Shown here piece by piece: positions 1,933-60,851 of a stretch of 64,000 nt of DNA. The stretch is from IMG/VR virus record IMGVR_UViG_3300027754_000034, positions 124,001 to 188,000 of that record. One strand, given 5' to 3'. Within the stretch, counting starts at the first letter, position 1. Each line of letters starts with the position of its first letter. The notes under the pieces were generated by a model that was not told the DNA's origin, ran no database searches, and saw nothing but the letters and a program-made list of their open reading frames with translations. The translations under genes were made by a program, and so were the position numbers.

Positions 1933-3234
1933 TCATGGCGCCTCGAGCGCGCGATCGATCACGGCGTCGCTCCACCTGAGCACGTGCTCGGGGTCGAAAC
2001 AGGCCGCCAGGGCTGCGGGTGTGAGAACCCGCACGACGTCGGGATCGGCCGCTAACAGCGTTTGAAACTCGCCATGCCCTTCGAACGAACGCATTGCCGA
2101 GCGTTGCACGACGACGTAGGCGTCCTGGCGCGCCATGCCCCTGCGGACGAGCTCGAGAAGCACGCCTTCGCTGTAACAGCGTCCGCCCGATAACTCGAGG
2201 TTTCGCAGCATCGTCTCCCCGTAAACGACGAGCCCTTCCGCGAGCCCTGCGGCACGCTCCAGCATGAAGCCGAGGGTTGCGATTGCGTCCGGCGCAATCA
2301 TTCTCTCGACGGACGAATGCGAGATGTCGCGCTCGTGCCAGAGGGCGACATTCTCAAGCGCCGGGATGACTGCCGCCCGCACGACACGCGCGAGGCCGCA
2401 CAGGTTTTCACTTAGGATTGGATTGCGCTTGTGAGGCATTGCGCTCGAGCCTTTTTGGCCGCAGGTGAACGCTTCCTCCGCCTCGGTGACTTCGGTGCGC
2501 TGCCAGTGTCGTACGTTCGTCGCGAGGCGCTCGATCCCTGCGGCTACGAGTGCGAGCGCGGCGAAGAAGGCTGCGTGACGGTCGCGTGCGACGACTTGGG
2601 TGGACACGGTCTCGGGGCGCAGGCCGAGGGTCTCGAGTGCTTTTGCCTCGAGTTCGGGTGAGAGGTGCGCGTAACTGCCGACCGCGCCGGCAAGCTTCCC
2701 GACTGCGATCTCGTCCCGCGCGATTCGCAGTCGATGGCGGCCCCGTTTCAGTTCGGCAAGGTGGCCTGCGAGCACCATGCCGAAACGCAGGGGTTCGGCG
2801 TGGATCCCGTGGCTGCGGCCGATGATCATCGTGTTGCGGTGCTCGTCCGTGCGCTTCGCGAGTGCGGCAATAAGGCGGTCCTGCCGCACGGCGAGGAGGT
2901 CACAGGACTGGACGAGGAGCATCGCGAAGCTCGTGTCGAGCACGTCGCTCGAGGTCATGCCGAAGTGGAGCCAGCGTGCGTCGCTTCCGGCGAGCTCTTC
3001 GACGTGCGTCAAAAATGCGATCACGTCGTGCTTCGTCGTGCGTTCGATCGCATCGATGCGCTCGGGATCGAGCTTGAGCTCTTTTGCGCGAATGTTGGCC
3101 ACGGTTCCAGCGGGGACGACGCCGGCTTCCTCCATGGCCTCACACGCGGCAAGCTCGACGGCCAACCAGGCTCGAAAACGGGTGAGCGGGGACCAAAGCT
3201 CCAGAAATTCGGCAGGAGTGTAGCGGGGGATCAT
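1933..3234 (-). CDS. purB: Adenylosuccinate lyase
   Basis: MIPRY start (ATG 3234), TKHDVIAF, HFGMTSSDV, GRSHGIHAEP, signature GSSAMPHKRNP, ERDISHSSVER; markedly GC-rich. Confidence 0.97.
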   Translation of the reverse strand: MIPRYTPAEFLELWSPLTRFRAWLAVELAACEAMEEAGVVPAGTVANIRAKELKLDPERIDAIERTTKHDVIAFLTHVEELAGSDARWLHFGMTSSDVLDTSFAMLLVQSCDLLAVRQDRLIAALAKRTDEHRNTMIIGRSHGIHAEPLRFGMVLAGHLAELKRGRHRLRIARDEIAVGKLAGAVGSYAHLSPELEAKALETLGLRPETVSTQVVARDRHAAFFAALALVAAGIERLATNVRHWQRTEVTEAEEAFTCGQKGSSAMPHKRNPILSENLCGLARVVRAAVIPALENVALWHERDISHSSVERMIAPDAIATLGFMLERAAGLAEGLVVYGETMLRNLELSGGRCYSEGVLLELVRRGMARQDAYVVVQRSAMRSFEGHGEFQTLLAADPDVVRVLTPAALAACFDPEHVLRWSDAVIDRALEAP

Positions 3235-3407
3235 GGCAGGCGGACGGTGTCCCGCTCCTTCACCGCGACGTCGTGGAACGCTTTGGCACACGCAAGCTCG
3301 GCTTCCAGCAAAACGATTTTCTCGCGTAGGGCGTCACGTTCTTCGACGGCCATAACCGTCTTGCCGCACATCCGTCGAACTAACTCTTGGATGATGTCGT
3401 AACTCAT
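3231..3407 (-). CDS. 58-aa phage-type coiled-coil protein translationally coupled to purB
   Basis: My translation MSYDIIQELVRR...AKAFHDVAVKERDTVRLP*; its TGA overlaps the purB ATG (ATGA). Confidence 0.6.
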   Translation of the reverse strand: MSYDIIQELVRRMCGKTVMAVEERDALREKIVLLEAELACAKAFHDVAVKERDTVRLP

Positions 3408-3450
3408 GGCCCTATTTTACACCGGTTAGAAGGGTCAACACCCTTCTCAA

Positions 3451-4230
3451 TCACTTTAACGCTTCCCGGCACCACGACATTAGATCGCTCCAAGATTGAT
3501 CTGGATCGCTGTCGTATTCCACGACGCGCTGTAGCGCCGCTCTTGCCTCATCAAGCTCCGCTAGCGCCTCCAATTCGCGTTTCTCGGCGGCGCGTAACGC
3601 TTCGCGCATCTTCGCCATGGCGGTACCGAACTCGCTTTTTGCCGCATACCAGTCTCGCTCGTACTCGGCGGCTTTTGCTTTCGCATCGTCGCGTTCATTT
3701 TCGGCAGCGGCGGCTCGCGCGCCAAGCTCTCGGTAGCCGTCCAGCTTTTCGTTTGCGGCGCGCTCAACCATGAATGCGTAGTTGGCCCGCGCCTCGTCGC
3801 GCTCTTTTGTTAGGCGCTGGATCTCCTCCTCGTGCGCCACATTCAGCGTGTACGTCCCGGTCGGCGCGAGGCGATGCAGTTGCTCAAGTTCTTTGTGTAA
3901 CTCGTCGCGCTCTGCCCGAGCCGCACGCGCGTCGGCGCGTAGGTTACGAATGGCGTTTTCGACGTGCATCGCCGCGTGCAGGTAGCTCGTGTCGCTCCAG
4001 CCAAACTCACTGACGAGCATATGCACCAGCGTGTCGCGCTCTGCTTTCAGCGAAACGAGTTTCACCGTCGCTTCGGCAAGACGCTTTGCCATACGACCGA
4101 CTTCGCTTTCGAGTGAGCGGACGTCGGCGAGTAGCATCAATTCGACTTCCTCACTCATCTTCGGCTCCATGCATCGCGCTCGCGAGCCGCCCTCCAGCTC
4201 GGTACGCCTCGACAGCGTGAAGCAACGCAC
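3451..4230 (-). CDS. Coiled-coil phage protein (probable start near 4158, MSEEVEL)
   Basis: Repeated ERDEARA/ERDDAKA heptads; part of the GC-rich island. Confidence 0.6.
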   Translation of the reverse strand: MRCFTLSRRTELEGGSRARCMEPKMSEEVELMLLADVRSLESEVGRMAKRLAEATVKLVSLKAERDTLVHMLVSEFGWSDTSYLHAAMHVENAIRNLRADARAARAERDELHKELEQLHRLAPTGTYTLNVAHEEEIQRLTKERDEARANYAFMVERAANEKLDGYRELGARAAAAENERDDAKAKAAEYERDWYAAKSEFGTAMAKMREALRAAEKRELEALAELDEARAALQRVVEYDSDPDQSWSDLMSWCREALK

Positions 4231-40120: not shown

Positions 40121-40528
40121 TCAAGTCATTTGTTCCAACATATCTTGAGCCTTATCGGACATCTCACCTTTACCTTTACCTTTACCTTTTTTCTGGTCTC
40201 TACGGTTTACCTTTTTTAGCTCTTTCTTTTCCTGGTTCACTTGAGTAGTAGTCATTACCGTATTTTGGCTAGGTCGAGCCATATTTTTACATAACGGACA
40301 ATATACACCAGAAGTCTTCACGGTATCCAGGTACACTTGGAAATCAGCGTTACATTTTTCACATTTATAATCCCACAATTTCATAGCAAGTCTTTTTGAC
40401 GTCGCATTCCTAAAATTGTAAGTTTTACCAAGTAACTCGATAGAACGTCGAAATTCATCCATACAAAGGCTCACCATTAAGGGTGTAACCTTCCGAATGG
40501 ATTTAACCGAACACTTCATTCGGACCAT
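40121..40528 (-). CDS. FmdB-like zinc-ribbon protein (true start probably MKLWDYKC)
   Basis: YKCEKC...F...CPLC. Confidence 0.5.
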   Translation of the reverse strand: MVRMKCSVKSIRKVTPLMVSLCMDEFRRSIELLGKTYNFRNATSKRLAMKLWDYKCEKCNADFQVYLDTVKTSGVYCPLCKNMARPSQNTVMTTTQVNQEKKELKKVNRRDQKKGKGKGKGEMSDKAQDMLEQMT

Positions 40529-42179
40529 TCCTGATTCACATGAGTACCAAGAACGTTTAAAATTAGAACTTTCTTGGTTTCGGGGTAGCGCGGCTGAACC
40601 TTATTTATTAACCGTCGCCCAAATATGCAGAGCAACAGTCGATATACCTCGAATTATTCGCGGATCAGCAGGTTCCAGTCTTGTCGTCTACGCCCTCGGG
40701 ATTTCAGACATTGATCCCGTTCATTGGAACATTGAGCCAGAACGGTTCTTCCATCCCCGACGACATTCTCTTCCCGATATCGATTTAGACTTCCCCGACA
40801 ATCGTCGTGACGAAGTCTTCGAACGCATCTACAATTTATTTCCCGGAAGAGCAGCTCGAATCTCTAATCATTCTCAATTTTCCGACGCCGGGTCCATTCG
40901 ACAAGCCGTTCGGTTTCTCGGTTATCGACACCATTTACCCAGTAAATTCCTTCTTTCCGACGTCGTTCCCGGTCTTGAATCTCGCGCCGTCGAAATCGCT
41001 TCAGAGTTACGACACCAAGTCTACAACATATCGCTTCATTGCGGCGGAGTCGTCGTTTTCGACCACCAGGTTCCACCACATCTTCTAACAGATTCCCCCC
41101 GACAAATTCGACTCGATAAGTTGGAAACCGAACATCATCAATTTATGAAAATCGACATTTTATCTAACATTTCGCTCACCCAACTCCACGCAATATCGGA
41201 CGCTCCCTTTTCCTCATATTCTGAAAAGGACGAACTCACATCCCGTCTCTTATCTAGCGGGCGTTCTCTCGGCATCACTCAAGCGGAGTCTCCCGCTTTC
41301 CAGAAGCTCCTTCGAGCACTTCGTCCTAATTCTCTTCCAGACGTCGTTCTCGCTATGGCTCTCATTCGTCCAGCATCCGCTTGGCGAGCCCACAGGCGCG
41401 ATTTTCTTAATCAGTGGCATCAAAATAGAAGAACTTCTCTCATGGTTTATGAGGACGACGCTACGCAGGTAATATCACGCCTCACAGGTTTACCAGGTCC
41501 TGAATCCGATGAAATTCGCCGCGCCTTTATAAATCGTCATCTGGAAATAACCAAAACATTAAGAGACAAATTAGAATTAACAGAAGAAGGTAACGGGATA
41601 ATCCAGGATATAGAGGCTTTTCGCACATTTTCAATGTGCAAGTCTCATTCAGTATCTTACGGGCGAGTTGTATGGGCACTCGCATATCATAAAGCCCACA
41701 ACCCCTCCGCTTTTTGGTTATCCACCATCAACCATGCAAAGTCCATGTGGCGTGATTGGGTGCACATTGAAGAAGCGAAACTGTCAGGACTCGACATAAA
41801 GCCGGGGAAAAAACCCTTCATCCTATCCGGTTCTACTTTATATCCTTCGGGATATACACCAACACTTTTCCTTCCGGATCCCCTTTGGGAGCTTAAAACT
41901 TACGGGATGTGGTCCGGCAATACGTTTCCAGCCGGATGTGGTCACAGTTATGATGAGACTCGAATCTCTTTCAAAGGAATAATCGGTACTTCTCGAATTT
42001 TAAAATCAAAAGATGGAGACGCCACTACATTTGTTACCATTGGGACTTCTCCCGGCGTATACCGCGATCTAATCTTAGAGGGAGCGATCGATACGACTCG
42101 CCGGAACTTTATCGAAGGTACCGGGGATTCGTATGTAACAAATGGGAGTGAATCTGTTAAAGTAACTCATTACGAGTTA

Positions 42180-42185
<6 letters not shown>
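40497..42185 (+). CDS. dnaE: Minimal C-family DNA polymerase (DnaE alpha-like, lacking PHP domain)
   Basis: [49 protein letters not shown]. Confidence 0.88.
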
Positions 42186-43986
<1,801 letters not shown>

Positions 43987-50455: not shown

Positions 50456-51025
50456 ATGCTGGAGATTACAAAAATGTTAAATGCGGAACTAATAGAGAGA
50501 ATATCTAAAACGAAAATAAATGTGAACCCTGAAGTTTATTCACATGAAATTCAAAAAGCTTTTCTACCATGGGATGTAGATTTATCTCCCTCTGCCTTAT
50601 ACGGGTGTAGTGTTGGATGCAGGAAGTCCATGGGAATTAAAACCCCAGAAGTAAAATGGATAAGTGTTAAAAGATGGGTGAATATAACACCAATGGGTGT
50701 TACCCTCCCACCAGGGTGTTATTTATCAATTAAAAGAAAAGAAACATTTGAAGCCACTCCGACACCCAAATTCATAAAACAAGATTTCGTTTTAGTATTA
50801 TTTCCACATGGGAATGTGTGGTCACAAAAAGAAGAAGATGATCCAATTACGGAAGAATGGTTATGGTCAGAAGAAAACGGAAAAACCATCTTCGAAATGC
50901 TCATAAATAAGGATTATGACAGACCGATATCTGGATATTTTTCTTCCTGCTATGGATATATGAAGAAAAATCCTGAACAAATCGGAATACACCTAAAGAG
51001 AAAGAAAAATCTCACTAAGGTGTGA
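50456..51025 (+). CDS. Hypothetical protein
   Basis: ORF track. Confidence 0.55.
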   Translation: MLEITKMLNAELIERISKTKINVNPEVYSHEIQKAFLPWDVDLSPSALYGCSVGCRKSMGIKTPEVKWISVKRWVNITPMGVTLPPGCYLSIKRKETFEATPTPKFIKQDFVLVLFPHGNVWSQKEEDDPITEEWLWSEENGKTIFEMLINKDYDRPISGYFSSCYGYMKKNPEQIGIHLKRKKNLTKV

Positions 51026-51027
51026 AA

Positions 51028-51237
51028 TCATTCAAGTCGTATGAAAGGAAGTCCCACTAAATTTCTCCTTATGGACTCTCTTTCTTCTGATGAATTCGTT
51101 TTTATTATTAAATGACTGTCGGACCAATGAATACTTAGGGCTTCATATGGTAACTCGGTGGTTCCGATCCATAATCTTATTCCATTCTGATTTATCGCTA
51201 TAGTTACTGAGTCCATCGAAAATACCTTAGGCTTCAT
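51028..51237 (-). CDS. Hypothetical protein
   Basis: ORF track. Confidence 0.4.
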   Translation of the reverse strand: MKPKVFSMDSVTIAINQNGIRLWIGTTELPYEALSIHWSDSHLIIKTNSSEERESIRRNLVGLPFIRLE

Positions 51238-51261
51238 AAAGACATTTTGAGTATAAAAGAA

Positions 51262-52296
51262 TTACTTTTTATATAACCTATTCACATTATTCAAGGCCCA
51301 TTCTTCCAATTCTGATTTTCCTAGTCTTTTTGCCGACCACCTAATTATATCATAGGGTCCTTCATGTAAGGCTGCTGGATGTCGAAAACCTATTCTATAT
51401 ACCGATGTTCCAAGTCCACTATCTAGTCCCATATTAATCGCTTGTCTCGACCAGATTATTGCTTTATCAAACATGTTGAGATGATAACTACAAAATCCTG
51501 CCAACCAATACAACTCCGCGATGCCAGGATGTCTACCTATCCCTCTCGCACATGATTCCAAAGCTTTCTGATATTCATTTTTCTTAATAAAGCAACCAGC
51601 CATTTTGAACATACTCCAAGCAGATTCTTCATCCCAGCCGTTCAAATTATGGCAAGATTCATAAGCTAGTATGGCGTCATCTAATTTATTTAAATTATTG
51701 TAAGTGTCTCCTAAATAATAAAACCACCTCGGATCTTTCGCATTTTCCTTTGTATGCTTTTCTAAAATTTCGGCATCTCTCTTTAGTTTGTGCTGCATCT
51801 GTTCAGCAGTCTTACGTAACTCACTAAAATTAGCATTAGGGGCATTGTGGCACCCCACAGAATGTGCAGGGTAAACCTCATGGGTAGGACCATAAAAAGC
51901 ACTGGATATAGGCAACCGAAAACATCGTGCTTTATAATATGTCTTCCCAACATCCATTATGGATATGCAGTTTTCTTTTGTAAGAGACATTAGTTTTCTT
52001 AAGTCATCGTTATTCTGGTGAATTCTTTCGTCCGTATCTAGAATTATCGCCCAATCACCACCGTGGTTATGCGCCGACAATAGTGTGAAATTCCGAGCAG
52101 CTGCAAAGTCATTGATCCATGGGAAAGATTCTATTATGAGTCTTTCTCCACATACATCTTTAGCTACTTCTAAAGTTTGGTCTGTAATGCCTGTATCAAC
52201 CACCAAGAATTTATCGACTATATCATATACGCTTTTTAAGGCATCTGATATTATACTCTGATTATTTCCAGATAGAGTTACACTTATGACCTTCAT
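51262..52296 (-). CDS. GT2 glycosyltransferase with TPR repeats
   Basis: VVDTG.TD.T, W.NDFAAARN, LDTDE, HE, DPRW.YYLG. Confidence 0.9.
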   Translation of the reverse strand: MKVISVTLSGNNQSIISDALKSVYDIVDKFLVVDTGITDQTLEVAKDVCGERLIIESFPWINDFAAARNFTLLSAHNHGGDWAIILDTDERIHQNNDDLRKLMSLTKENCISIMDVGKTYYKARCFRLPISSAFYGPTHEVYPAHSVGCHNAPNANFSELRKTAEQMQHKLKRDAEILEKHTKENAKDPRWFYYLGDTYNNLNKLDDAILAYESCHNLNGWDEESAWSMFKMAGCFIKKNEYQKALESCARGIGRHPGIAELYWLAGFCSYHLNMFDKAIIWSRQAINMGLDSGLGTSVYRIGFRHPAALHEGPYDIIRWSAKRLGKSELEEWALNNVNRLYKK

Positions 52297-52349
52297 AACT
52301 AAGTTATTTTACTAATTGAGTTGTCGCATCATTACTTTATTTATGGTAT

Positions 52350-52766
52350 GTGAAAATCATGGGAATTTTTAGCAAGTTAAAACATAAAATAGCCGTAACC
52401 AAAAGCAATAGAAGAGAAAAAAGAAAAGAAAAACTCCGTTCCCCTAAGTGGTCTTCTACCAGGGATTCATTTTTAAAAAGTCACAATACTTGCTCTGTGT
52501 GTATGGGAACCAGTAATCTACAAGTACACCACATAAAACCATTCCATAAATATCCCGAACTAGAATTAGACTCTGAAAATCTTATTACATTATGTATGGG
52601 CGACAAGGATTGCCACTTAGGAATAGGTCATGGAGGATCCTTTGATTTTTATAATCCAAAGGTTCGAGAAGATGTAAAACTGCTTACGGAAAAATTGTCT
52701 TTATTTGATAAATTGAAAACAGAAATAAAGCAAAGAAGATTTTCTAATACTAATAAATCCCTCTAA
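52350..52766 (+). CDS. HNH endonuclease
   Basis: CSVC...LQVHHIKP...NLITLC....CH...H. Confidence 0.88.
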   Translation: MKIMGIFSKLKHKIAVTKSNRREKRKEKLRSPKWSSTRDSFLKSHNTCSVCMGTSNLQVHHIKPFHKYPELELDSENLITLCMGDKDCHLGIGHGGSFDFYNPKVREDVKLLTEKLSLFDKLKTEIKQRRFSNTNKSL

Positions 52767-53047
52767 TCTCCAATAACGATATCCAAAGACAATAAATTTA
52801 GAGAATATGTGAGTTGCATTTGCGCCACTACGTGGAGGCCATTACTTGGTGTTTCCATGACCTCCCGTATTGATTTTATGTCTTCAGATTCTTGAGCCAG
52901 CTCACATTTATCTAAACTATAACTCTCAATTAATCCTTGCTTACATAATGATTCTAAAAGAATATTAATTTTAACCCGATGAGTTTCTAACGATTTATCT
53001 GTAATTATATAATTAGATATCGTATCACGAATCATTTGCTCTATCAT
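52763..53047 (-). CDS. Hypothetical protein
   Basis: Leaderless-type box; internal tag-like IREVMET. Confidence 0.45.
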   Translation of the reverse strand: MIEQMIRDTISNYIITDKSLETHRVKINILLESLCKQGLIESYSLDKCELAQESEDIKSIREVMETPSNGLHVVAQMQLTYSLNLLSLDIVIGD

Positions 53048-53135
53048 AAATGAAGTTACACAAAGAATTTCATTTACACCGGATTTGAATTTGTCATATA
53101 CCCTAGTAGTTCCCCGAGCATATGTTCAGGTGAAA

Positions 53136-53185
53136 CGACGCCGTGATCGATCGAGTGTATTCGGGCTCGAACGATCACGGCGTCG
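53136..53185. other. GC-rich hairpin in AT-rich intergenic DNA
   Basis: cgacgccgtgatcg...cgatcacggcgtcg perfect 14-bp arms plus inner tcgag/ctcga. Confidence 0.7.
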
Positions 53186-53280
53186 AACGTGAATCCCATT
53201 CTTTTAACATTGGCTTTAAACCTTGATTAAGGCTGCGGAGTCTCACCACGGTTTTTATCTTTTAATGTATACTTCATAGT

Positions 53281-54174
53281 ATGAACCCCGTAAATGCATC
53301 TAATATGATGAAGAGAATGGCTGCCGCGTTAGCGGCATCCAAGTCTCCCAATAAATCTGCCGTAGCAAAAGATCTTATGGCATTATCTGACGCCATAAAC
53401 GGAAATAGAAAAGCTGAGGCTTATTTAACAAATAAATTGGCGGGAGGAAGGACTCACAAAGGAAACATACCACCCCTCCCCATGCAAGGGGAGCGTTTGG
53501 ATTTTTCTGGTATGATCCCTTTAGATAAGGATTTTCATGGGAAGGACCTGTCCGTACTGAACTTCATCGATGAGGATTTACGCAGGGCGCAATTACAAAA
53601 CGCGAAACTTAACGGGAGGGACCTGTCCGGGGCGGACCTGTCCGGGGCGGACCTGACCGGGGCGGACCTGAGCGGTGCGAAACTTAACGAGGCAACCATG
53701 AAAGGGGCGAACCTCACCGGGGCGGACCTGACCGGGGCGGTCCTGACCAACGTAAACCTGTCCGTGGCGAAACTGACCGAGGCGAACCTGTCCGGGGCGA
53801 ACCTGTCCGGGGCGAACCTGTCCGGGGCGAACCTCACCGGGGCGAACCTGTCCGGGGCGAATCTGGACGAGGCATTTCTGATTGATAAGCGGCACCCCGC
53901 ACCCACAGTAAGAGCTGAAGGACACCCAGAAATAGAATTGTTCATCCAAGAAAATCTCAGCAGAAATTATGGAGTTCATACTCTCAATGACTGGTCTGAT
54001 CTCTTGACTGATGCGGTATATGAGGCGTCCGGTGCCTACCATGGTAGTAATTTGAAAGAGCGTGTAAAAGAGGAGCTGATAAAGGAACTATTAGCGGGCA
54101 ATTTTATGAGAGGCATTATAGACTTCAGTGATATTCTGAAAAGACTTCAAATTTCGGATGTAATGATGGCATAA
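53281..54174 (+). CDS. Mosaic pentapeptide-repeat protein (N-module of 24897, C-domain and tag of 16875)
   Basis: KRMAAAL..SK.P N-terminus; ends DFSDILKRLQISDVMMA*. Confidence 0.88.
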   Translation: MNPVNASNMMKRMAAALAASKSPNKSAVAKDLMALSDAINGNRKAEAYLTNKLAGGRTHKGNIPPLPMQGERLDFSGMIPLDKDFHGKDLSVLNFIDEDLRRAQLQNAKLNGRDLSGADLSGADLTGADLSGAKLNEATMKGANLTGADLTGAVLTNVNLSVAKLTEANLSGANLSGANLSGANLTGANLSGANLDEAFLIDKRHPAPTVRAEGHPEIELFIQENLSRNYGVHTLNDWSDLLTDAVYEASGAYHGSNLKERVKEELIKELLAGNFMRGIIDFSDILKRLQISDVMMA

Positions 54175-54248
54175 TAGTAAAAATGCAACTGAACCATAAT
54201 GATCACCAAACAGAAAACACGTGGATTATTATGGCACCTCACTTGTTG

Positions 54249-54824
54249 TCACTTATTTGATGACCACACCACACGCCGACGACCTTTATCCTTAATATAG
54301 GCTCGAACTATGGATGATATTGGAATGTTTCCAGGATATCTTGCTGTCAAAGCCCCCAATCCCCCTTGCCCATCATCGATCAACAAAGGGTCAGGGGTAA
54401 TCTTCATGGAGTTAATAACCTGAATGATTACATCATTAGGTTCACCCCCGTTTTCGATGAGCTTCATGATCTCGGCCCCAGCTTCTGGATATTCATCCAT
54501 GAACTCGTCAGATGGCGGGTCTCCAAGACTATAACAGTTCACGGAGTCCTCATCCATCAAGAGAGGTCCAGGTGGAACCACCTCGATGATTACAACCTCA
54601 TCGTCTGATAGTTTTAGAATTTCCTGATAATTGTTGGCCCCTTTCATATTATTTATGAGATAAACCCCTTCTCCCGTCTTATATCCTCCCCATTTAACAT
54701 TATTAGAAGTCTTTTTCAGTCCGCTCTTAAGAATAGATTTCAACAACTTCCGATTCGTAACATGAAACCATTTATTACCGCCAGCAGCCACCCGATAGGC
54801 AACAGTGTAGAGATTCATAGACAT
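54249..54824 (-). CDS. ADP-ribosyltransferase-fold (Tpt1/DarT-like) protein with 'RVAA' leader
   Basis: WFHVT....LKSILKSGLK...GVYL...IP.S.I. Confidence 0.65.
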   Translation of the reverse strand: MSMNLYTVAYRVAAGGNKWFHVTNRKLLKSILKSGLKKTSNNVKWGGYKTGEGVYLINNMKGANNYQEILKLSDDEVVIIEVVPPGPLLMDEDSVNCYSLGDPPSDEFMDEYPEAGAEIMKLIENGGEPNDVIIQVINSMKITPDPLLIDDGQGGLGALTARYPGNIPISSIVRAYIKDKGRRRVVWSSNK

Positions 54825-54991
54825 CCTTGTTGAGATAGTAGTATGCTGAATTTTATTATTACGGTGATACTTTTCTTCCTGTTATTTTAAAAAAAAATTC
54901 AGTATCATTTAGCCTTGTTGGTGTTTATCCAGTATAATCTATTTGCGTTTTACTAATTGACTTTTTTGATACGTAGTGTTACAATGGTTAC

Positions 54992-56515
54992 ATGATTGAG
55001 TTTTTAGATTCTGAATTTACTCTTAGAGAGTTTGGTTATTCAGTTCCTAAAAGATCAGATGATAAATGCTATGCCAAATGCTCACTTGGGAATCATTCTG
55101 TAATAACCACGTTAAGAGCTTTGAAGAGAACTCTTAAGAAGCGTGGGTTATATAGATGTTCTAAGTGCGTTTCTAACTCAGAAGAAGGCAAGCGACACCG
55201 ATCTTTGCAGGCCATTACTTTATGGTCTAATCCAGAAATAGCAAGTTTGATATCTGAAAAATCTAAGGAGTTAGCGAATAGCGAGAAGGGAAGAGCACAA
55301 CGTTCTCTTCAATCAAAGAAGGCGTGGGAGTCAGAACCCTATTCCAGAGTTCAAAAAGACCGAATCGCTAGTTTATTTAAGTCAGAAGAACATCGTAAAT
55401 TAGTATCTGAACGGAATAAAAAGGATTACCAAGAAAATCCTATTAAATATATTGAAGATAAAGTATCCGCGATGTGGTCGGATGCTGCAAAGAAAAAACA
55501 TAAAGAAGCTCTGGCTAGTCCCGAATATAGAGAAACTCACCGCCAGTTAGCCAAAACCAGGTTTGAAAACGATGAGTATAAAGAAAAAATAGCTAAGGGA
55601 CTAGAAAACTTTCCTCGTGGTGGGAAGATGTCCACGCCGGAAAAGCAGGTAAAAGATATTTTAGAAGCTCTTGTACTAGAGTATGTTTATAACAAGGCGG
55701 TAGGCCCTTATAACTTTGACTTCTATATCGAAAAACTTAACCTATATGTTGAGGTACAAGGTGAATATTGGCACAGTCTACCAAATAACGAAAGACGAGA
55801 TCGGGCTAAGTTTTCATACCTAAGAATGGCTTTTCCAGAAGCCAAATTAATTTATCTGTGGGATTATGATTTTAACTCCGGAAACGCTGAATATAAAATT
55901 CGAGAAGCATTAGGGTTATCCCTTAATTCAGCAATCGAGTTTAAGTTCTCAGAATGTTCATTGAGAACAGTTAATTCAACTGAGGCTAAGCCGTTTCTTA
56001 ACAGCTGGCATTACGCGCAATATGGAAAGGCTGCTAAATTTCTCTATGGTGTTTATTTAAACGAGTTATTAATATCAGTTTGCAAAATTGGTCCGGTGAG
56101 CCGTAAAGAAGTCGCTTCGTCAGAAGGATTCACTCCTAAAGAATGCTTCGAACTTGATAGGTTCTGCATTCACCCTTTTTATCATAAGAAAAACCTCGGG
56201 TCTTTTCTATTGAGCCGATCGGTAAAAACTTTCTTTAATGAATTTCCGCAATCTAAAGCATTAGTTAGCTTTTCTGATTCTACCTTCGGGCATGAGGGAA
56301 CTATTTATCGAGCTAGTAATTGGACGGAAGTCAGAAAAGTAAAACCTGATTACATTTATGTGGCTTCTGATGGATGGATTTTACATAAGAAAACCCTATA
56401 TAATCAAGCCGTTTCGGTACATATGACCGAAACGGCTTATGCTTCTAAGCATGGTTATAAAAAAGTATTCGGAAAAGAAAAAACGAAATTCATCACCAAA
56501 CGCTCATGTCGATAA
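54992..56515 (+). CDS. Fusion: helical repeats, DUF559/Vsr-like endonuclease and Mom-like (GNAT) domain
   Basis: S.PE...FDFYI...VEVQGEYWH...RD..K; FL..WHY, ELDRFC, SFLLSRS, LVSFSD...GHEGTIYRASNW. Confidence 0.78.
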   Translation: MIEFLDSEFTLREFGYSVPKRSDDKCYAKCSLGNHSVITTLRALKRTLKKRGLYRCSKCVSNSEEGKRHRSLQAITLWSNPEIASLISEKSKELANSEKGRAQRSLQSKKAWESEPYSRVQKDRIASLFKSEEHRKLVSERNKKDYQENPIKYIEDKVSAMWSDAAKKKHKEALASPEYRETHRQLAKTRFENDEYKEKIAKGLENFPRGGKMSTPEKQVKDILEALVLEYVYNKAVGPYNFDFYIEKLNLYVEVQGEYWHSLPNNERRDRAKFSYLRMAFPEAKLIYLWDYDFNSGNAEYKIREALGLSLNSAIEFKFSECSLRTVNSTEAKPFLNSWHYAQYGKAAKFLYGVYLNELLISVCKIGPVSRKEVASSEGFTPKECFELDRFCIHPFYHKKNLGSFLLSRSVKTFFNEFPQSKALVSFSDSTFGHEGTIYRASNWTEVRKVKPDYIYVASDGWILHKKTLYNQAVSVHMTETAYASKHGYKKVFGKEKTKFITKRSCR

Positions 56516-57710
56516 TATCATCATGAACTGCCCCTGTTCCTATTAGGATAACAGGCACCCCAGCAGTTTCTTCTACTTTGTTAATGAAATCGCGGGATTC
56601 TTTAGAAAGACTCTTTAGAGCCTCCTTTCCTCCACGAATCCCATTATCATTCCAGTTTAGATATTGAACGAAGTTCACCGAGATCTTGGTAACCCCGTTT
56701 ACGCGAACGGCGTCTTCCAAGCCTATCCAAGAAAATGTAGAAACTCGTCGAATACGTTTTGTAACTGTTGTACGCTCGCGTTCTGCTAGTTTTTCTGCCT
56801 CTTCTTTAGGCATTCCCGCGTTTTTTGCTACTTGATCCCAGGTCAGCTCTTTACAATCATCGTAAAAGCCTCCTGAATACCCCTTCTGCTCTCCGTCATC
56901 CTCCACCACATTGCCTACGCGGATTGGGTAGGAGCGAAGATTCAGCCAAACATCACCCAGCATACTGGGAGGTACCGCCATGTAGTCCATAGCGGCTTGC
57001 AGGGTGCAGTTCCGACTCGTGCAGAATGGATAATGAGACCCATGGTCTATTGACAGTGCATAACCTTGGCTTCCTTCATGGAGCCAAGTATTACCTTCAT
57101 TAATCAATGAATGCGTGAGATTCCGAAATTCCATGGCAGACACCACCTGAATTTTCTCAAGTGCTTCTGCAATCCCGTTTTCTCCAATATATTTTTGGCA
57201 TTCCGAATCAGATGAAAGCAAGTCTGAGAACACATCTTCTAACTTGCGAGAAGCCACCACTGAGGCGTTTGGCTTTCGAAGAATCTTATCAGACAAAGCC
57301 GTTCCTGATCCCTGCATCGTGGAGGCAATGTGTTTGGTGGACTCCATACCATCTCGCTCACGAGAGGCATGTTCATCTGTCACATAAAGAGCTCGATCAT
57401 GAATGAAGAGACGAGGATTGCCACATTCATGCCATTCCTTCAAAAGCTGCTTCGGGGCAAATCCGGAACCTGGGCTTACAAATCCCACCATTCCAATCCC
57501 ATTCACCTTCTTAAGGATCAGAGCCGTTGGAATGGCCTTGGATACGAATTTTGTTCCATCTGCAAATATGGCGGAGTGACCGGCATTCGGAAGATTCGCG
57601 GAGGAGACGTTCACCACCCCATATTTATCAGCCAGGTATGTTGATATCTTTCCTTTCCCACTCGATCCCCACGCCTGATCCAAAATTACGTTAAATTTAC
57701 CGTTCTTCAA
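56493..57710 (-). CDS. purZ: PurZ-like 2-aminodeoxyadenylosuccinate synthetase (PurA paralog)
   Basis: WGSSGKGK (Ser where PurA has catalytic Asp13), PNAGH, EGSQG, YPIRVG (Ile, not Thr), TTVTK, NFVQY (not TKLD); TTG start with GGAGG. Confidence 0.8.
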   Translation of the reverse strand: MKNGKFNVILDQAWGSSGKGKISTYLADKYGVVNVSSANLPNAGHSAIFADGTKFVSKAIPTALILKKVNGIGMVGFVSPGSGFAPKQLLKEWHECGNPRLFIHDRALYVTDEHASRERDGMESTKHIASTMQGSGTALSDKILRKPNASVVASRKLEDVFSDLLSSDSECQKYIGENGIAEALEKIQVVSAMEFRNLTHSLINEGNTWLHEGSQGYALSIDHGSHYPFCTSRNCTLQAAMDYMAVPPSMLGDVWLNLRSYPIRVGNVVEDDGEQKGYSGGFYDDCKELTWDQVAKNAGMPKEEAEKLAERERTTVTKRIRRVSTFSWIGLEDAVRVNGVTKISVNFVQYLNWNDNGIRGGKEALKSLSKESRDFINKVEETAGVPVILIGTGAVHDDIIDMSVW

Positions 57711-57739
57711 TGCAACCTCCGTGTTTAGAGACTATACAT

Positions 57740-58507
57740 TCAGTCTTTATCTTCAATATCATTTTTAACCGGCTTTAAATCCGAAATCAGAATTTCCGAT
57801 TCAACGCCCGAAACTCTATATAAGGTAGTTTTTTCGTATATCTTATCAAGATCTTTTTTCTCTACATATCTGGCTAGACTTCTACGAGGGTCATTTTTAA
57901 AATGACCCAAGGCAAATATTCGGGCACCCGCTAGTTGTTTAAAAGTGAATTCTCTCCCTTCTAATTTAAATTCTTTTCTTTTATGGTATCTATTTAGTTC
58001 TCTTACCTTCAAATGCCTTCTGAGAGAACGTTCACTCACGAACATCACTCGAATGGAAATGTCACTAGGTATTTTCTTAAATAATCTTAAGGAAATTCTC
58101 AAAGCATAATCGCATGCTAATGCAAAAGCATCTTGATATGAATTGGCCCTAATTAAGACACTCGCCATTCCGAAAGATTCATGCAATATGACTCGCCAGA
58201 TTTTCATATCGGGGTCTATACTTTCACCCACCAGCCTTCTAAGGGTATTTATTTTGTAATCAGGGAATGCTAATTTTTGAGCAGCATCAAATATCTGATC
58301 AAATTTAGTTTTCCCTGATTTTGCAGGATGAATCGGAATCTCTTCTAAAATACTATAATGTATAGCATTGTTTTTTATTAGTTCCGTGAGCACTTCCCTG
58401 AAGTATTCTTCATCCTTTTTACCAGACATTCTAAATATGCATTTTTCTATCGCTTCCAGGGCCTCTTCAGATAAAGGATCAACAGAACGAATTTTGGGAC
58501 TACTCAT
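57740..58507 (-). CDS. Hypothetical protein
   Basis: 255-aa ORF upstream of purZ. Confidence 0.6.
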   Translation of the reverse strand: MSSPKIRSVDPLSEEALEAIEKCIFRMSGKKDEEYFREVLTELIKNNAIHYSILEEIPIHPAKSGKTKFDQIFDAAQKLAFPDYKINTLRRLVGESIDPDMKIWRVILHESFGMASVLIRANSYQDAFALACDYALRISLRLFKKIPSDISIRVMFVSERSLRRHLKVRELNRYHKRKEFKLEGREFTFKQLAGARIFALGHFKNDPRRSLARYVEKKDLDKIYEKTTLYRVSGVESEILISDLKPVKNDIEDKD

Positions 58508-58865
58508 AAACTGTATAGTTTTAGCACAGAAGACAGACTCTGGGTACTTTACCCAATGGGATTAAATTACTTACTCGAAAAATTAATTTAATCCTAGCCT
58601 AATAAGGGAGCGGTTTTAAACCAGGAAGACCTAAGAAAAAAATAGGATCATCAGAATCGAGATTTTTCTGATTATCTGAAAATAAAGCATCTCATGATCC
58701 TTTATTTTCTTTTTCTTTTTTTGATCTGATCTTTTGTTAATTGAAATGAAATGGAAATGAACAAAGTAGATTCCTTCGTAGCAGGACACCCAGAGAAGGT
58801 AGAAGAGAAGTCAGTGAAGAAGAACGCCAAGTAAGTAGAACGCCAAGTAAGTAGAAGATTTAGAA

Positions 58866-59135
58866 ATGAAAGATTTTATTATAAGTAAAGAAGAGGGGAT
58901 ATTTCCTACTTTCTTTATTTTTATGGATCTTCCGAAGCATCTAGAGTATAGAGTGCAAAATATGCCCCTTTTAAAAGAAGGTATGATCGTTGATTTTAAT
59001 CTAAACATCAATGATCTTAGGTCTTTTAGACATCCCAAGATTATTAAGGGTAACCATATAATAAATAAATGTGTTTTCAAATATGGGGGAAAAAGGCCCG
59101 GTTTGGTGCAGTATGTGGAGTGGAAAGCTATTTAA
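58866..59135 (+). CDS. Hypothetical protein
   Basis: ORF track. Confidence 0.5.
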   Translation: MKDFIISKEEGIFPTFFIFMDLPKHLEYRVQNMPLLKEGMIVDFNLNINDLRSFRHPKIIKGNHIINKCVFKYGGKRPGLVQYVEWKAI

Positions 59136-59552
59136 AATTTATGAAACTTATGTAGGATAGTATTAAATAAAAATATTTATTGTGTAAATTGTATATGAGA
59201 AAGTATCCTCTTATATAAAGGGTCAATTTACGAAAAAATATTTAAATCACTATTCATTGAAGGGGGTCTACACACGAGAGCGTCACTTCTCTGGGATTCG
59301 CTGGTTATTTTCCTAAATGAAAGAATGGTGTGCCAATATGCTGAAGACTGGGGTATATGGGAAAGGAGCAGTGGGGAGAAATTTTATGAAAATTTGGCGA
59401 AAATTCTTATGCTTGTTTAGTATTTACTGAACAGATATTTACTTTACTATTGACTTTAAAAGAGGGCTATGTTAGACCTCTTTTATCCGATGTTGATCGG
59501 TTCTAACCATAACTCCGATAAGTCGGCGTAGCATTCGCCGCATGGGGACTAC

Positions 59553-60851
59553 ATGAATTCTGAAAAAGCCGATATTTCGGCAAGTTCTTCTGTGCGTGTC
59601 ATTATTCCTACAACTTCGGAATTTTTGACTAAATGGAATGCCTGGATTCACGGCAAAGTGAGCAAGCATTATAAGCGAGATAAAGAAAGAATCCCTGACA
59701 CTGCTCAAAGGGTAAGGCTTCGTTTACTCTCCAAGGATTTCATTTCTCGTTGGTTTTTTAAACATCTCACTGACGATCTCGTTGATCTGTCAGAGGCAAT
59801 CAGTATGACTGGCAATCCTAGGATTAATTTTTCACCTAGGATTAGCCCAGTTCATGGGGGTCGCAAAGATCCTAATTCTCTTTGGAGAATTTCAGATATT
59901 CTGAATTTCAGTAATTTTGATTATGAAAGGTATTTTTATAGTACTCAGAATCACACTATAGAGACTGATAAATTTCTTCGTTTATTGGGTTACGGATCTA
60001 AAAGTACTGTTACAGGTAAGTGGGAAATAAACACCGAGGATTATAGTGTACTGGAGTCATTATATCGACAAGGTAGAATCAAACCTGCTGAACTTACGGA
60101 ACATACTTGTTCAGAATCTAACATCAAGAAGAATTCTGACGGAACATGTTTAGTAGGTGGTTGTTCAGAAAAGCATTTTAGCAAGGGTTATTGTAAACCT
60201 CATTATAGAAGTACTCGCGCCAATGCATGTTCTGAATGTGAAAAAGGAAGAAATGTACTCAAAAGTAAGGGTATTTCTCTTGCTCATAGATGGAATGACC
60301 CTGAAGTAATAAAGTCTGTTTCGAAGCTTCGTTGGAACGATTCTCAGCTGGTTCCATTCTTGCGGGATTGGAAAAGTGGAAATCTTATTAAGCATCCACC
60401 TCGCTACATTATGAGAAAGCCTTCTGAGGCTACGGTGGATGCTGGATTACTCAAATACGCTAATATGGTGATTGATAATGACGTTTTCAATCATTTTAAG
60501 AGTATGATCAGATCGGATGATGTCTCTTACATCTCATTAGATATAAAATCTGACCCTGATGGGTCTACATTTGAGAAAATGTATTGGGAGACTAGTGAAG
60601 AAGGTTCAGGAAGAACAGCAGTATTTATCGATCATAACGCTCAAAATGAATTTATTGTGACTGAAGACAGATATACTATTATTTCATTAATAAGAAAGGC
60701 GAATTTAACACAGATTGAAGAGAATATCATCAAATTTGTGGATCTAGAAGAGTCTACCATATCTGAAGTAGCAGATAAATTAGGACTAGCCCCGGCTAAA
60801 ATTAATAAAATTCGTTTAAACGCTATGAATAAAATAAGAAGTTTAGCTTAA
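59553..60851 (+). CDS. ECF-like sigma factor with large Zn-finger-containing insertion in region 2
   Basis: DTAQ (DxxQ of sigma2.2), LLKYANMVIDNDVFNHFK (sigma2.3/2.4-like), LTQIEENII...TISEVADKLGLAPAKINKIRLNAMNKIR (sigma4). Confidence 0.65.
   Translation: MNSEKADISASSSVRVIIPTTSEFLTKWNAWIHGKVSKHYKRDKERIPDTAQRVRLRLLSKDFISRWFFKHLTDDLVDLSEAISMTGNPRINFSPRISPVHGGRKDPNSLWRISDILNFSNFDYERYFYSTQNHTIETDKFLRLLGYGSKSTVTGKWEINTEDYSVLESLYRQGRIKPAELTEHTCSESNIKKNSDGTCLVGGCSEKHFSKGYCKPHYRSTRANACSECEKGRNVLKSKGISLAHRWNDPEVIKSVSKLRWNDSQLVPFLRDWKSGNLIKHPPRYIMRKPSEATVDAGLLKYANMVIDNDVFNHFKSMIRSDDVSYISLDIKSDPDGSTFEKMYWETSEEGSGRTAVFIDHNAQNEFIVTEDRYTIISLIRKANLTQIEENIIKFVDLEESTISEVADKLGLAPAKINKIRLNAMNKIRSLA

What the first reader, a model, noticed from the sequence alone, without database searches (positions are those of the whole stretch)
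54992..56515. Endonuclease-Mom fusion overlapping purZ tail-to-tail
Seen: a DUF559/Vsr-like nuclease fused to a Mom-like domain (WHY, ELDRFC, SFSD, GHEGTIYRASNW), overlapping the purZ stop by 23 bp. Established: Mu Mom modifies adenine N6. Inference: a second adenine-directed modification, a Z-versus-A discriminating nuclease, or a free-standing homing element targeting the purZ locus.
Basis: partly seen in the sequence, partly recalled or inferred. Interest (0 to 1): 0.6.

Follow-up and report, generated by a model that had tools for sequence, protein, structure and literature searches.

The report
Homing endonuclease gene beside purZ
The gene is a selfish "homing" nuclease of the known Hef/Vsr-like family, one of six copies in this giant phage, and its lineage has specialised on the 3' end of the purZ gene; it is mobile DNA, not part of the phage's unusual base chemistry.

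Summary
A 507-aa ORF (54992-56515, +) overlaps the 3' end of a purZ-like gene (56493-57710, -) by 23 bp. It joins a Vsr-like nuclease to a Mom-family GNAT domain. The nuclease is of the EDxHD type, with I-Bth0305I as best PDB hit and all catalytic residues present. Nuclease plus C-terminal domain are homologous to annotated "Hef-like homing endonucleases".

The 257-kb phage record holds six paralogs. They share this core but have different N-termini and sit at unrelated loci. The orthologs of this copy lie at the purZ 3' end in all 12 loci examined. Yet 27 of 31 IMG/VR purZ loci lack it, scattered across the purZ tree.

Close relatives show a clean 1.5-kb single-gene indel and a 40-bp deletion footprint. 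In one locus an 85-nt copy of the purZ 3' end lies on the far side of the gene and differs only at synonymous sites.

The best reading is a free-standing homing endonuclease gene that inserts into the last ~85 nt of purZ. The role of the Mom-like domain is unresolved: six Mom active-site residues are conserved, but essential R151 is Thr. This is a new member of a known kind.

The parts
54992..56515 (+). Free-standing homing endonuclease gene (Hef-like / EDxHD family), 507 aa
   Evidence: ORF. Near full-length PHROG matches to phrog_559 and phrog_3339 'homing endonuclease'. BLASTP E=4e-15 to the Acinetobacter phage 133 Hef-like homing endonuclease, across the nuclease and the C-terminal domain. 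AF2 model mean pLDDT 91.5.
55061..55177 (+). N-terminal Cys4 zinc-ribbon-like module (about residues 24-62; C30, C56 and C59 conserved)
   Evidence: Nearly invariant Cys columns in A2 and A5. Two strands plus a helix in the model. Paralogs give weak Pfam matches to zinc-ribbon/zinc-finger families in the same place. The DNA-binding role is inferred.
55178..55609 (+). Helical repeat region (residues 63-206), with recurring S-x-E-G-R-x-x-R-S-x-Q-S-K-x-A-W / PEY-R motifs; presumed target-recognition module
   Evidence: Nine consecutive helices at high pLDDT. It is among the least conserved parts across the family, with 24% mean pairwise identity against 40-49% for the core. No Pfam family matches and no fold match above Z 5.
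55610..55921 (+). Vsr-like PD-(D/E)xK nuclease domain of the EDxHD type (residues 207-310); E217, D243, Q256, H261, D270, K273
   Evidence: PDB 3r3p_A (I-Bth0305I) E=3.9e-7. D243, H261 and K273 are invariant, and D270 and E254 nearly so, in 82 homologs.
55937..56512 (+). Mom-family GNAT-like domain (residues 316-507); H340, Y341, R390, S404, D429 and Y439 conserved; T431 stands in place of Mom R151
   Evidence: Pfam Mom E=8e-23. 8bv8 alignment. Foldseek 8bv8 E=2e-11. Column counts. This is the most conserved part of the family.
56493..56515 (.). 23-bp tail-to-tail overlap of the endonuclease gene and the purZ 3' ends
   Evidence: In orthologous loci the overlap ranges from 35 bp to a 71-bp gap, so its size is not conserved.
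56493..57710 (-). purZ-like gene (405 aa, TTG start); its last ~85 nt are the inferred insertion/target region
   Evidence: The insertion region is inferred from the 85-nt duplicate in L018 and the decayed duplicate in L017. No duplicate is detectable in the window itself.
54957..54985 (+). Promoter-like site (TTGACT-17-TACAAT with TG) just upstream of the ATG
   Evidence: Such sites are not enriched over shuffles (14 found against 10.7 +/- 3.8), so this is weak.

Best explanation
This is a free-standing homing endonuclease gene (HEG) of the Hef / EDxHD (Vsr-like) family. It belongs to a lineage that lives at the 3' end of purZ. The protein is modular. A variable N-terminal zinc ribbon plus helical repeats would read the target sequence (inferred). 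A Vsr-like EDxHD nuclease domain would cut DNA (inferred from conserved catalytic residues and from the characterised relatives I-Bth0305I and Hef). A C-terminal Mom-family GNAT-like domain forms a conserved core together with the nuclease. When a HEG-less relative co-infects the same cell, the enzyme would cut in or near the last ~85 nt of its purZ. Repair from the HEG-carrying genome would then copy in the HEG together with the adjoining purZ 3' end (inferred). The comparative data show that the gene is gained and lost as a single-gene unit at this one site, which is the footprint of that cycle. The role of the Mom-like domain is not settled. It may be a DNA-binding or base-flipping module, or an active acyl-transferase that marks the element's own DNA.
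For: Family membership: the best PDB sequence hit is I-Bth0305I, with D and H present where the crystal mutant has Ala. EDxHD residues are invariant or nearly so in 82 homologs. Taylor et al. 2011 place Hef-type endonucleases in the EDxHD family (PMC3239194). Homology to an annotated Hef-like HEG runs over both core domains. PHROG matches are to homing endonuclease families.

Multicopy: six paralogs in the 257-kb record all end in a Mom domain but differ at the N-terminus. They sit beside a major head protein gene, between a RecD2-like helicase and an SbcD-like phosphoesterase, and at other unrelated places. One copy is broken by a stop and has His to Tyr in the nuclease motif.

Site specificity: all 12 loci that carry an ortholog have it at the purZ 3' end (window). 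A paralog-type homolog does not.

Patchiness: 27 of 31 IMG/VR purZ loci lack it. Its presence needs at least 6 changes on the purZ tree, 2 of them forced by well-supported branches.

Clean indel: L036 and L038 differ by exactly the 1.5-kb gene between purZ and the next conserved gene.

Loss: L060 (HEG-less, purZ 85% identical to the window's) keeps a frameshifted footprint of about 40 bp of the HEG 3' end, with 87% identical flanks to HEG-bearing L013.

Gain and insertion site: in L018 an 85-nt copy of the purZ 3' end lies upstream of the HEG start. It is 71/85 nt identical and 27/27 aa identical, so all differences are synonymous. L017 has a decayed copy.

The N-terminal modules are the least conserved parts and the nuclease plus Mom-like core the most, as expected if the N-terminus sets target specificity.
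Against: No cleavage site or activity is shown, and the target is inferred from two related loci, not from the window, which has no duplicate. I found no nucleotide pattern in the purZ 3' end that separates HEG-bearing from HEG-less alleles, so the basis of self-immunity is unknown. The HEG and purZ trees do not clearly conflict. Much of the patchiness could therefore be repeated loss after one old gain, rather than active homing today. The strict conservation of a Mom-like active site is not explained by a pure homing-nuclease model. The constant linkage to purZ is also what a functional partnership would give.
Confidence: 0.85

Rival explanations
1. It is a fused restriction-modification-like weapon, as Iyer et al. 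2021 predicted for jumbo-phage Mom-REase fusions. The Mom-like domain would acylate adenine (or 2-aminoadenine) N6 in the phage's own DNA, and the nuclease would attack unmodified host or competitor DNA. A hybrid version is possible: a homing endonuclease whose self-immunity comes from modifying its own target site.
For: The prediction is in the literature (PMC7824862). H340, Y341, R390, D429 and Y439 are invariant and S404 is Ser in 78 of 82 homologs. These match Mom H58, Y59, R111, D149, Y159 and S124, which are needed for Mom activity. The Mom-like domain is the most conserved part of the family. The genome has no stand-alone Mom; all six Mom domains are in these fusions. No sequence difference that would protect the HEG-bearing purZ allele was found.
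Against: Mom R151 is Thr here and in 78 of 82 homologs, and the R151A Mom variant has no detectable activity in vivo. Annotated Hef-like endonucleases of phage 133 and CP81 have Asn at the D149 position and fall below Pfam's Mom threshold, so in that branch the domain looks non-catalytic. Six paralogs with different N-termini, each a dispensable single-gene indel, fit selfish elements better than a genome-wide defence. Most related phages do without this copy.
Confidence: 0.2
2. It is a functional partner of purZ in the Z-genome lifestyle. For example, it could be a nuclease that tells A-DNA from Z-DNA and destroys A-containing DNA, or a second modification of Z/A.
For: Orthologs are beside purZ in 12 of 12 loci. 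This holds even where the gene pair is inverted between the same flanking genes. The genome also encodes PurB-like and MazG-like genes, which is consistent with a Z pathway.
Against: 27 of 31 purZ loci lack it. The two closest purZ relatives found lack it, and one of them has a deletion footprint. Five paralogs with the same catalytic core lie at loci unrelated to purine metabolism. The wider family is common in phages with no purZ, including Campylobacter phages, T4-like phage 133 and Tenacibaculum phages. purZ in these phages is also invaded by two kinds of intein and by a second HEG on its 5' side, the usual fate of a conserved gene targeted by selfish elements.
Confidence: 0.04
3. It is a decayed, no longer mobile remnant that is kept only by linkage: a domesticated or dying HEG with no current activity.
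For: The HEG and purZ trees are broadly compatible. Loss events are documented. One paralog in the same genome is visibly broken.
Against: This copy is a full-length open frame with every catalytic residue of both conserved domains that the family keeps. Orthologs at 48-66% identity keep the full length. The synonymous-only duplicate in L018 points to a recent insertion.
Confidence: 0.08

Closest known systems
Hef and Hef-like free-standing homing endonucleases (phage U5; T4-like Acinetobacter phage 133; Campylobacter phages CP81/CP8, hef-1 to hef-8; Tenacibaculum PTm1)
   Same: The architecture is the same: a variable N-terminus, a Vsr-like nuclease and a GNAT/Mom-like C-terminal domain, alignable over about 320 residues (E=4e-15). 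They occur in many copies per genome and sit between conserved genes, for example between gp23 and gp24 in phage 133 and beside the tail sheath gene in CP81. Hef is reported to cleave nrdB of HEG-less phages (PMC2988022).
   Different: Identity is only about 23%. In those proteins the C-terminal domain is below Pfam's Mom threshold and has Asn at the Mom D149 position, whereas this clade keeps D149 and scores E=8e-23. The target locus differs: purZ rather than nrd or structural genes. I could not compare it with U5 Hef itself, because neither the sequence nor the 2005 paper was available.
I-Bth0305I, prototype of the EDxHD homing endonuclease family (PDB 3r3p)
   Same: It is the best solved-structure match for the nuclease domain (E=3.9e-7), and all EDxHD positions are conserved (E217, D243, H261, D270).
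   Different: I-Bth0305I is intron-encoded, has NUMOD2/HTH-like N-terminal modules and has no Mom-like domain. This protein is free-standing, has a zinc ribbon plus helical repeats, and carries the extra C-terminal domain.
Phage Mu Mom (PDB 8bv8), a tRNA-Gly-dependent N6-adenine modifying GNAT
   Same: It is the top structural match (Foldseek E=2e-11). The equivalents of H58, Y59, R111, S124, D149 and Y159, and probably W181, are present.
   Different: Here the domain is fused to a nuclease rather than being a stand-alone protein of about 240 aa. Essential R151 is Thr, R154 is His, and the dimer-interface residue W48 is not conserved. No modification activity is known for any fused member.
Jumbo-phage Mom-REase fusions noted by Iyer, Anantharaman, Krishnan, Burroughs and Aravind 2021 (Viruses 13:63)
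   Same: This is the same kind of protein in the same kind of genome. [quoted passage not shown]
   Different: That paper reads them as restriction-modification-like defence or offence. The locus-level evidence here (patchy single-gene indels, footprint, target duplication) argues that they behave as homing elements.
Free-standing HEGs that insert into the 3' end of a host gene and carry a replacement copy of its C-terminal coding segment (described for fungal mitochondrial genes; from my own knowledge, not checked here)
   Same: In L018 and L017 the HEG is flanked on both sides by purZ 3'-end sequence. One copy completes the gene and the other is a displaced remnant.
   Different: The nuclease family and the host system differ, and the window itself no longer shows the remnant.

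Membership tests
EDxHD (Vsr-like) homing endonucleases | Nuclease domain homologous to I-Bth0305I/Vsr | tested here: met
   3r3p_A E=3.9e-7, residues 214-279. Pfam Vsr/DUF559 matches are weak but recur in the paralogs.
EDxHD (Vsr-like) homing endonucleases | Composite catalytic motif E...D...x...H...D | tested here: met
   E217 (71/82), D243 (82/82), Q256 at the x position, H261 (82/82), D270 (81/82).
EDxHD (Vsr-like) homing endonucleases | Behaves as a mobile element: patchy presence at one fixed site among related genomes | tested here: met
   4 of 31 IMG/VR purZ loci carry it. At least 6 changes on the purZ tree. Clean 1.5-kb indel. Deletion footprint. Synonymous-only duplicate of the target gene end.
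EDxHD (Vsr-like) homing endonucleases | Site-specific double-strand cleavage of the HEG-less allele | not testable with these tools
   This needs an enzyme assay. The homodimer prediction gave no verdict.
Hef-like homing endonucleases | Homology across nuclease plus C-terminal domain to annotated Hef-like proteins | tested here: met
   BLASTP E=4e-15 over residues 163-457 against the phage 133 Hef-like protein. tblastn hits to Campylobacter hef genes. phrog_559 and phrog_3339 match nearly full length.
Hef-like homing endonucleases | Direct similarity to the founding member, U5 Hef | not tested
   The U5 sequence and the 2005 paper were not available. The link rests on annotations and on Taylor 2011.
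Mom family (PF25680) | Mom-type GNAT fold and sequence profile | tested here: met
   Pfam E=8e-23, 81.6 bits against a cut-off of 27.1. Foldseek 8bv8 E=2e-11, TM 0.60-0.64 on the target.
Mom family (PF25680) | Residues essential for momylation: R111, S124, D149, R151 | tested here: not met
   R390, S404 and D429 are present, but R151 aligns to T431, which is Thr in 78 of 82 homologs. Three of the four are met.
Mom family (PF25680) | Transfers a group to N6 of adenine in dsDNA | not testable with these tools
   This needs LC-MS or sequencing kinetics on DNA exposed to the protein.
PurZ (neighbouring gene) | Scores as PurZ rather than PurA | tested here: inconclusive
   The best NCBIfam model is amino_Aden_PurZ, but at 190.6 bits against a cut-off of 300. 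The best PHROG is the PurZ family, E=5.6e-60. Top PDB hits include 7odx PurZ.

The most novel reading that the evidence does not exclude
The Mom-like domain is catalytically active with altered chemistry (Thr and His in place of Mom R151 and R154). It would mark a purine in the element's own recognition site, so that the protein is a self-contained 'homing restriction-modification' enzyme. In that case immunity of the carrier genome comes from a covalent base modification instead of from target-site sequence change, possibly acting on 2-aminoadenine in a Z-genome.
Probability: 0.15. Interest if true: 0.75.

Novelty: new member of a known kind. Interest (0 to 1): 0.35.

Why it matters
The locus gives a well-documented natural example of the gain and loss cycle of a homing endonuclease in uncultured giant phages. 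The insertion point is pinned to the last ~85 nt of purZ.

It shows that purZ, the signature gene of 2-aminoadenine genomes, is a hot spot for at least four kinds of selfish element: a 3' Hef-like HEG, a 5' Hef-like HEG, and inteins at two sites.

It warns against reading every Mom-nuclease fusion in jumbo phages as a defence or DNA-modification system.

It leaves one open question that can be tested directly: why a homing nuclease family keeps a nearly intact Mom active site. If such enzymes cut Z-containing DNA at defined sites, they could also be useful reagents.

Tried and rejected
1. The megablast search of the phage collection found nothing close.
3. The homodimer prediction for residues 207-507 gave no verdict (score 0.00). 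It is no evidence either way.
4. The N-terminal 210 residues had no Pfam match even at E<=10. A separate AF2 model searched against about 48,000 PDB representatives gave nothing above Z 4.7, so the fold and DNA-binding role of this part remain inference.
5. I searched for remnants of the endonuclease 3' end downstream of purZ in the other HEG-less loci, by tblastn and by motif. None were found.
6. I searched for a purZ 3'-end duplicate upstream of the gene in the window, L013-L015, L029, L034, L036 and L052. None was found; only L017 and L018 have one.
7. A codon-by-codon comparison of the last 28 purZ codons in 10 HEG-bearing and 19 HEG-less alleles showed no diagnostic nucleotide pattern.
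8. The HEG tree and the purZ tree showed no well-supported conflict, so they do not decide between horizontal transfer and repeated loss.
9. The promoter and terminator scan was not enriched over shuffles.
10. No HD (DatZ-like) gene was found in the held 257 kb. The record is estimated to be 60% complete, so this says little.
11. The Sandegren 2005 Hef paper is not held.
12. A literature search for PurZ together with homing endonuclease found nothing relevant.
13. I did not use the large representative protein search, because the word search and family scans already settled the family.

Full report
**Observation**

The window holds a 507-aa ORF at 54992-56515 (+) and a 405-aa ORF at 56493-57710 (-). 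Their 3' ends overlap by 23 bp.

- Pfam finds a Mom domain (PF25680, E=8e-23, residues 324-484) and a sub-threshold Vsr match (E=0.009, residues 214-262).
- The nuclease call is secured by a PDB sequence hit to 3r3p, the nuclease domain of the homing endonuclease I-Bth0305I (E=3.9e-7, residues 214-279). Mu Mom (8bv8) aligns to residues 319-452.
- An AlphaFold2 model built on 82 homologs is confident (mean pLDDT 91.5). Its best Foldseek match is Mu Mom (E=2e-11), followed by ordinary GNATs.
- The neighbouring gene is purZ-like. Its best PHROG is the PurZ family (E=5.6e-60). Its best NCBIfam model is amino_Aden_PurZ, although below the cut-off (190.6 against 300 bits). Its PDB hits include 7odx PurZ. 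From memory, the top hits 6fm1, 6fko and 6tnh are the phiVC8 PurZ entries.

**Which family it belongs to**

- PHROGs matches nearly the whole protein to families named HNH or homing endonuclease (phrog_559, phrog_3339), and matches the C-terminus to Mom-like (phrog_1384).
- tblastn against deposited phages hits genes annotated "Hef-like homing endonuclease". These are in Campylobacter phages (up to 8 places per genome), T4-like Acinetobacter phage 133 and Tenacibaculum phages.
- In phage 133 the gene sits between gp23 and gp24. In CP81, hef-7 and hef-8 sit beside the tail sheath gene.
- BLASTP of the focal protein against the phage 133 protein aligns residues 163-457, covering the nuclease and the C-terminal domain, at E=4e-15.
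- Taylor et al. 2011 defined the EDxHD family of Vsr-like homing endonucleases around I-Bth0305I and state that Hef-type endonucleases belong to it (PMC3239194).
- Hef is cited as an endonuclease that cleaves nrdB (PMC2988022).
- In an alignment of 82 homologs the EDxHD positions are conserved: E217 (71/82), D243 (82/82), Q256 at the variable position, H261 (82/82) and D270 (81/82). K273 is also invariant.

**It is one of six copies**

The window is part of a 257-kb IMG/VR virus record estimated to be 60% complete. A search of that record finds five more paralogs.

- All six end in a Mom domain, and most have a DUF559/Vsr-like domain before it.
- Their N-termini differ: zinc ribbons, helical repeats, DUF7487.
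- A scan of the record with the Mom family model finds only these six, so there is no stand-alone Mom.
- One paralog lies just after the major head protein gene. It is split by a TAG and has Tyr in place of the nuclease His.
- Another lies between a RecD2-like helicase and an SbcD-like phosphoesterase.
- Across the family the N-terminal parts are the least conserved (24-27% mean pairwise identity). The nuclease (40%) and the Mom-like domain (49%) are the most conserved.

This is the pattern of a modular nuclease with exchangeable targeting modules.

**The tie to purZ**

A word-based protein search found 157 homologs, mostly on large phage-like contigs. I looked up the contigs of six full-length orthologs at 49-66% identity. 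Each lies at the 3' end of an adenylosuccinate-synthetase-family gene, tail to tail, with anything from a 35-bp overlap to a 71-bp gap. A 37%-identical paralog-type homolog does not.

Among 31 purZ loci recovered from IMG/VR, only four carry the ortholog. Three are tail to tail and one is head to tail. On a purZ tree, presence needs at least six changes, two of them forced by well-supported branches.

- **Clean indel.** L036 (present) and its sister L038 (absent) differ by exactly this gene. The interval from the purZ stop to the next conserved gene is 1594 bp in one and 93 bp in the other.
- **Loss.** The two closest purZ relatives of the window (85% identity) both lack the gene. One of them, L060, aligns at 87% DNA identity with HEG-bearing L013 on both sides. 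It retains about 40 bp of the endonuclease's 3' end with a 5-bp deletion, which is a footprint of loss.
- **Gain and insertion site.** In L018 an 85-nt copy of the purZ 3' end lies 65-150 nt upstream of the endonuclease start. It matches the functional purZ end at 71 of 85 nucleotides and 27 of 27 amino acids, so all differences are synonymous. L017 has a decayed 63-nt copy. Two copies that differ only synonymously must have diverged as parts of working genes in different lineages and then been brought together. That is what insertion of a cassette (purZ 3' end plus endonuclease) into the last ~85 nt of purZ would give.
- **The window itself.** It has no such remnant.
- **Orientation.** In L013 and L060 the pair is inverted between the same flanking genes relative to the window, L015 and L018. 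The endonuclease still stays at the purZ 3' end.

**purZ as a target for selfish elements**

Related purZ genes carry LAGLIDADG inteins at two different sites (L013; L035 and L052). A second, different Mom-type endonuclease sits on the 5' side in L017, L018, L052 and L061.

**The Mom-like domain**

The 2026 Mom study lists H58, Y59, R111, S124, D149, R151, Y159, W48 and W181 as important. R111, S124 and R151 are essential (PMC13219725).

- The 8bv8 alignment maps these to H340, Y341, R390, S404, D429, T431, Y439, T330 and probably W462.
- In 82 homologs H340, Y341, R390, D429 and Y439 are invariant and S404 is Ser in 78.
- Position 431 is Thr in 78 of 82, and a neighbouring His434 (Mom R154) is nearly invariant.
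- The pocket is therefore under strong constraint but is not a canonical Mom site.
- In the annotated Hef-like proteins of phage 133 and CP81 the D149 position is Asn, and Pfam's Mom model no longer scores. This suggests the domain can serve without Mom chemistry.
- Iyer et al. [quoted passage not shown]

My data do not exclude an active modification role. They do show that the genes behave as homing elements.

**Mechanism proposed**

- Shown: domain composition, conserved catalytic residues, multicopy state, site-specific but patchy distribution, a clean indel, a deletion footprint, and a target-end duplication.
- Inferred: the N-terminal zinc ribbon and helical repeats recognise a sequence in the terminal part of purZ. 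The EDxHD domain cleaves HEG-less alleles during co-infection. Recombinational repair then copies the gene in, with co-conversion of the purZ end.
- Unknown: the cut site, how the carrier allele is protected (no diagnostic nucleotides were found), whether the enzyme dimerises (no verdict), and what the Mom-like pocket binds.

**Rivals**

- A purZ-linked role in Z-DNA chemistry is unlikely. Most purZ phages lack the gene, and paralogs with the same core sit elsewhere.
- A pure restriction-modification reading fits the conserved pocket but not the indel and paralog pattern. A hybrid, a homing enzyme with modification-based self-immunity, is the most novel reading left open. I put it at about 0.15.

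**Novelty and score**

Hef-like and EDxHD endonucleases, and Mom-nuclease fusions in jumbo phages, are already in the literature. What is new is a purZ-specific lineage, with its insertion site and life cycle documented. A literature search for PurZ with homing endonuclease found nothing relevant. I rate it a new member of a known kind, interest 0.35.

**Limits**

The founding Hef sequence and paper were not available. The big representative protein search was not needed and was not used.

Noticed in passing
window 1933-3291 (-), within the GC-rich stretch 2001-4000: An adenylosuccinate lyase (PurB-like: Lyase_1 plus ADSL_C) gene lies in a 63% GC island, while the rest of the window is about 35-50% GC. 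It looks like a recently acquired cellular gene. It would supply the step after PurZ in 2-aminoadenine synthesis.
   Followed up: partly
window 51026-54991: This is an accessory island that is absent from the syntenic relative L008, where purZ directly abuts the homolog of 50456-51025. It holds a GT2 glycosyltransferase with TPR repeats (51262-52296), a small HNH endonuclease (52350-52766), a pentapeptide-repeat protein (53281-54174) and a weak PARP-like ORF (54249-54824).
   Followed up: partly
L013:5505-7844, L035:2636-5098, L052:2627-5050: purZ genes of related phages are about 780-820 aa because of in-frame LAGLIDADG inteins. These sit at two different sites: after about residue 230 in L013 (a 1125-bp insertion relative to L060) and near residue 55 in L035 and L052.
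   Followed up: partly
L017:6908-8518, L018:6730-8427, L061:238-1944, L052:921-2624: A second, different Mom-type endonuclease gene (536-568 aa, 30-34% identical to the focal one, with a treble-clef zinc finger) sits on the 5' side of purZ in several relatives. There purZ is flanked by homing endonuclease genes on both sides.
   Followed up: partly
L013 and L060 compared with window 50456-60851: The endonuclease-purZ pair is inverted as a unit between the same flanking genes (homologs of 50456-51025 on one side and of 57740-58507 on the other) in L013 and L060 relative to the window, L015 and L018. In L052 the endonuclease follows purZ head to tail.
   Followed up: partly
G000:C1:230391-231893 (L004:910-2412): This paralog, just downstream of the major head protein gene, is split by a TAG stop and has Tyr in place of the catalytic His of the nuclease. 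Its Mom-like part is still intact. It is probably a decaying copy.
   Followed up: partly
window 40497-42185 (+) and 42180-43967 (-): A DNA polymerase III alpha-like ORF of only 562 aa (NTPase and finger domains) ends where a collagen-repeat ORF on the other strand begins. The polymerase may be split or truncated.
   Followed up: no
G000:C1:87878-88078: A MazG-like gene is present in the genome. No HD-domain (DatZ-like) gene was found in the held 257 kb of a record estimated to be 60% complete.
   Followed up: no
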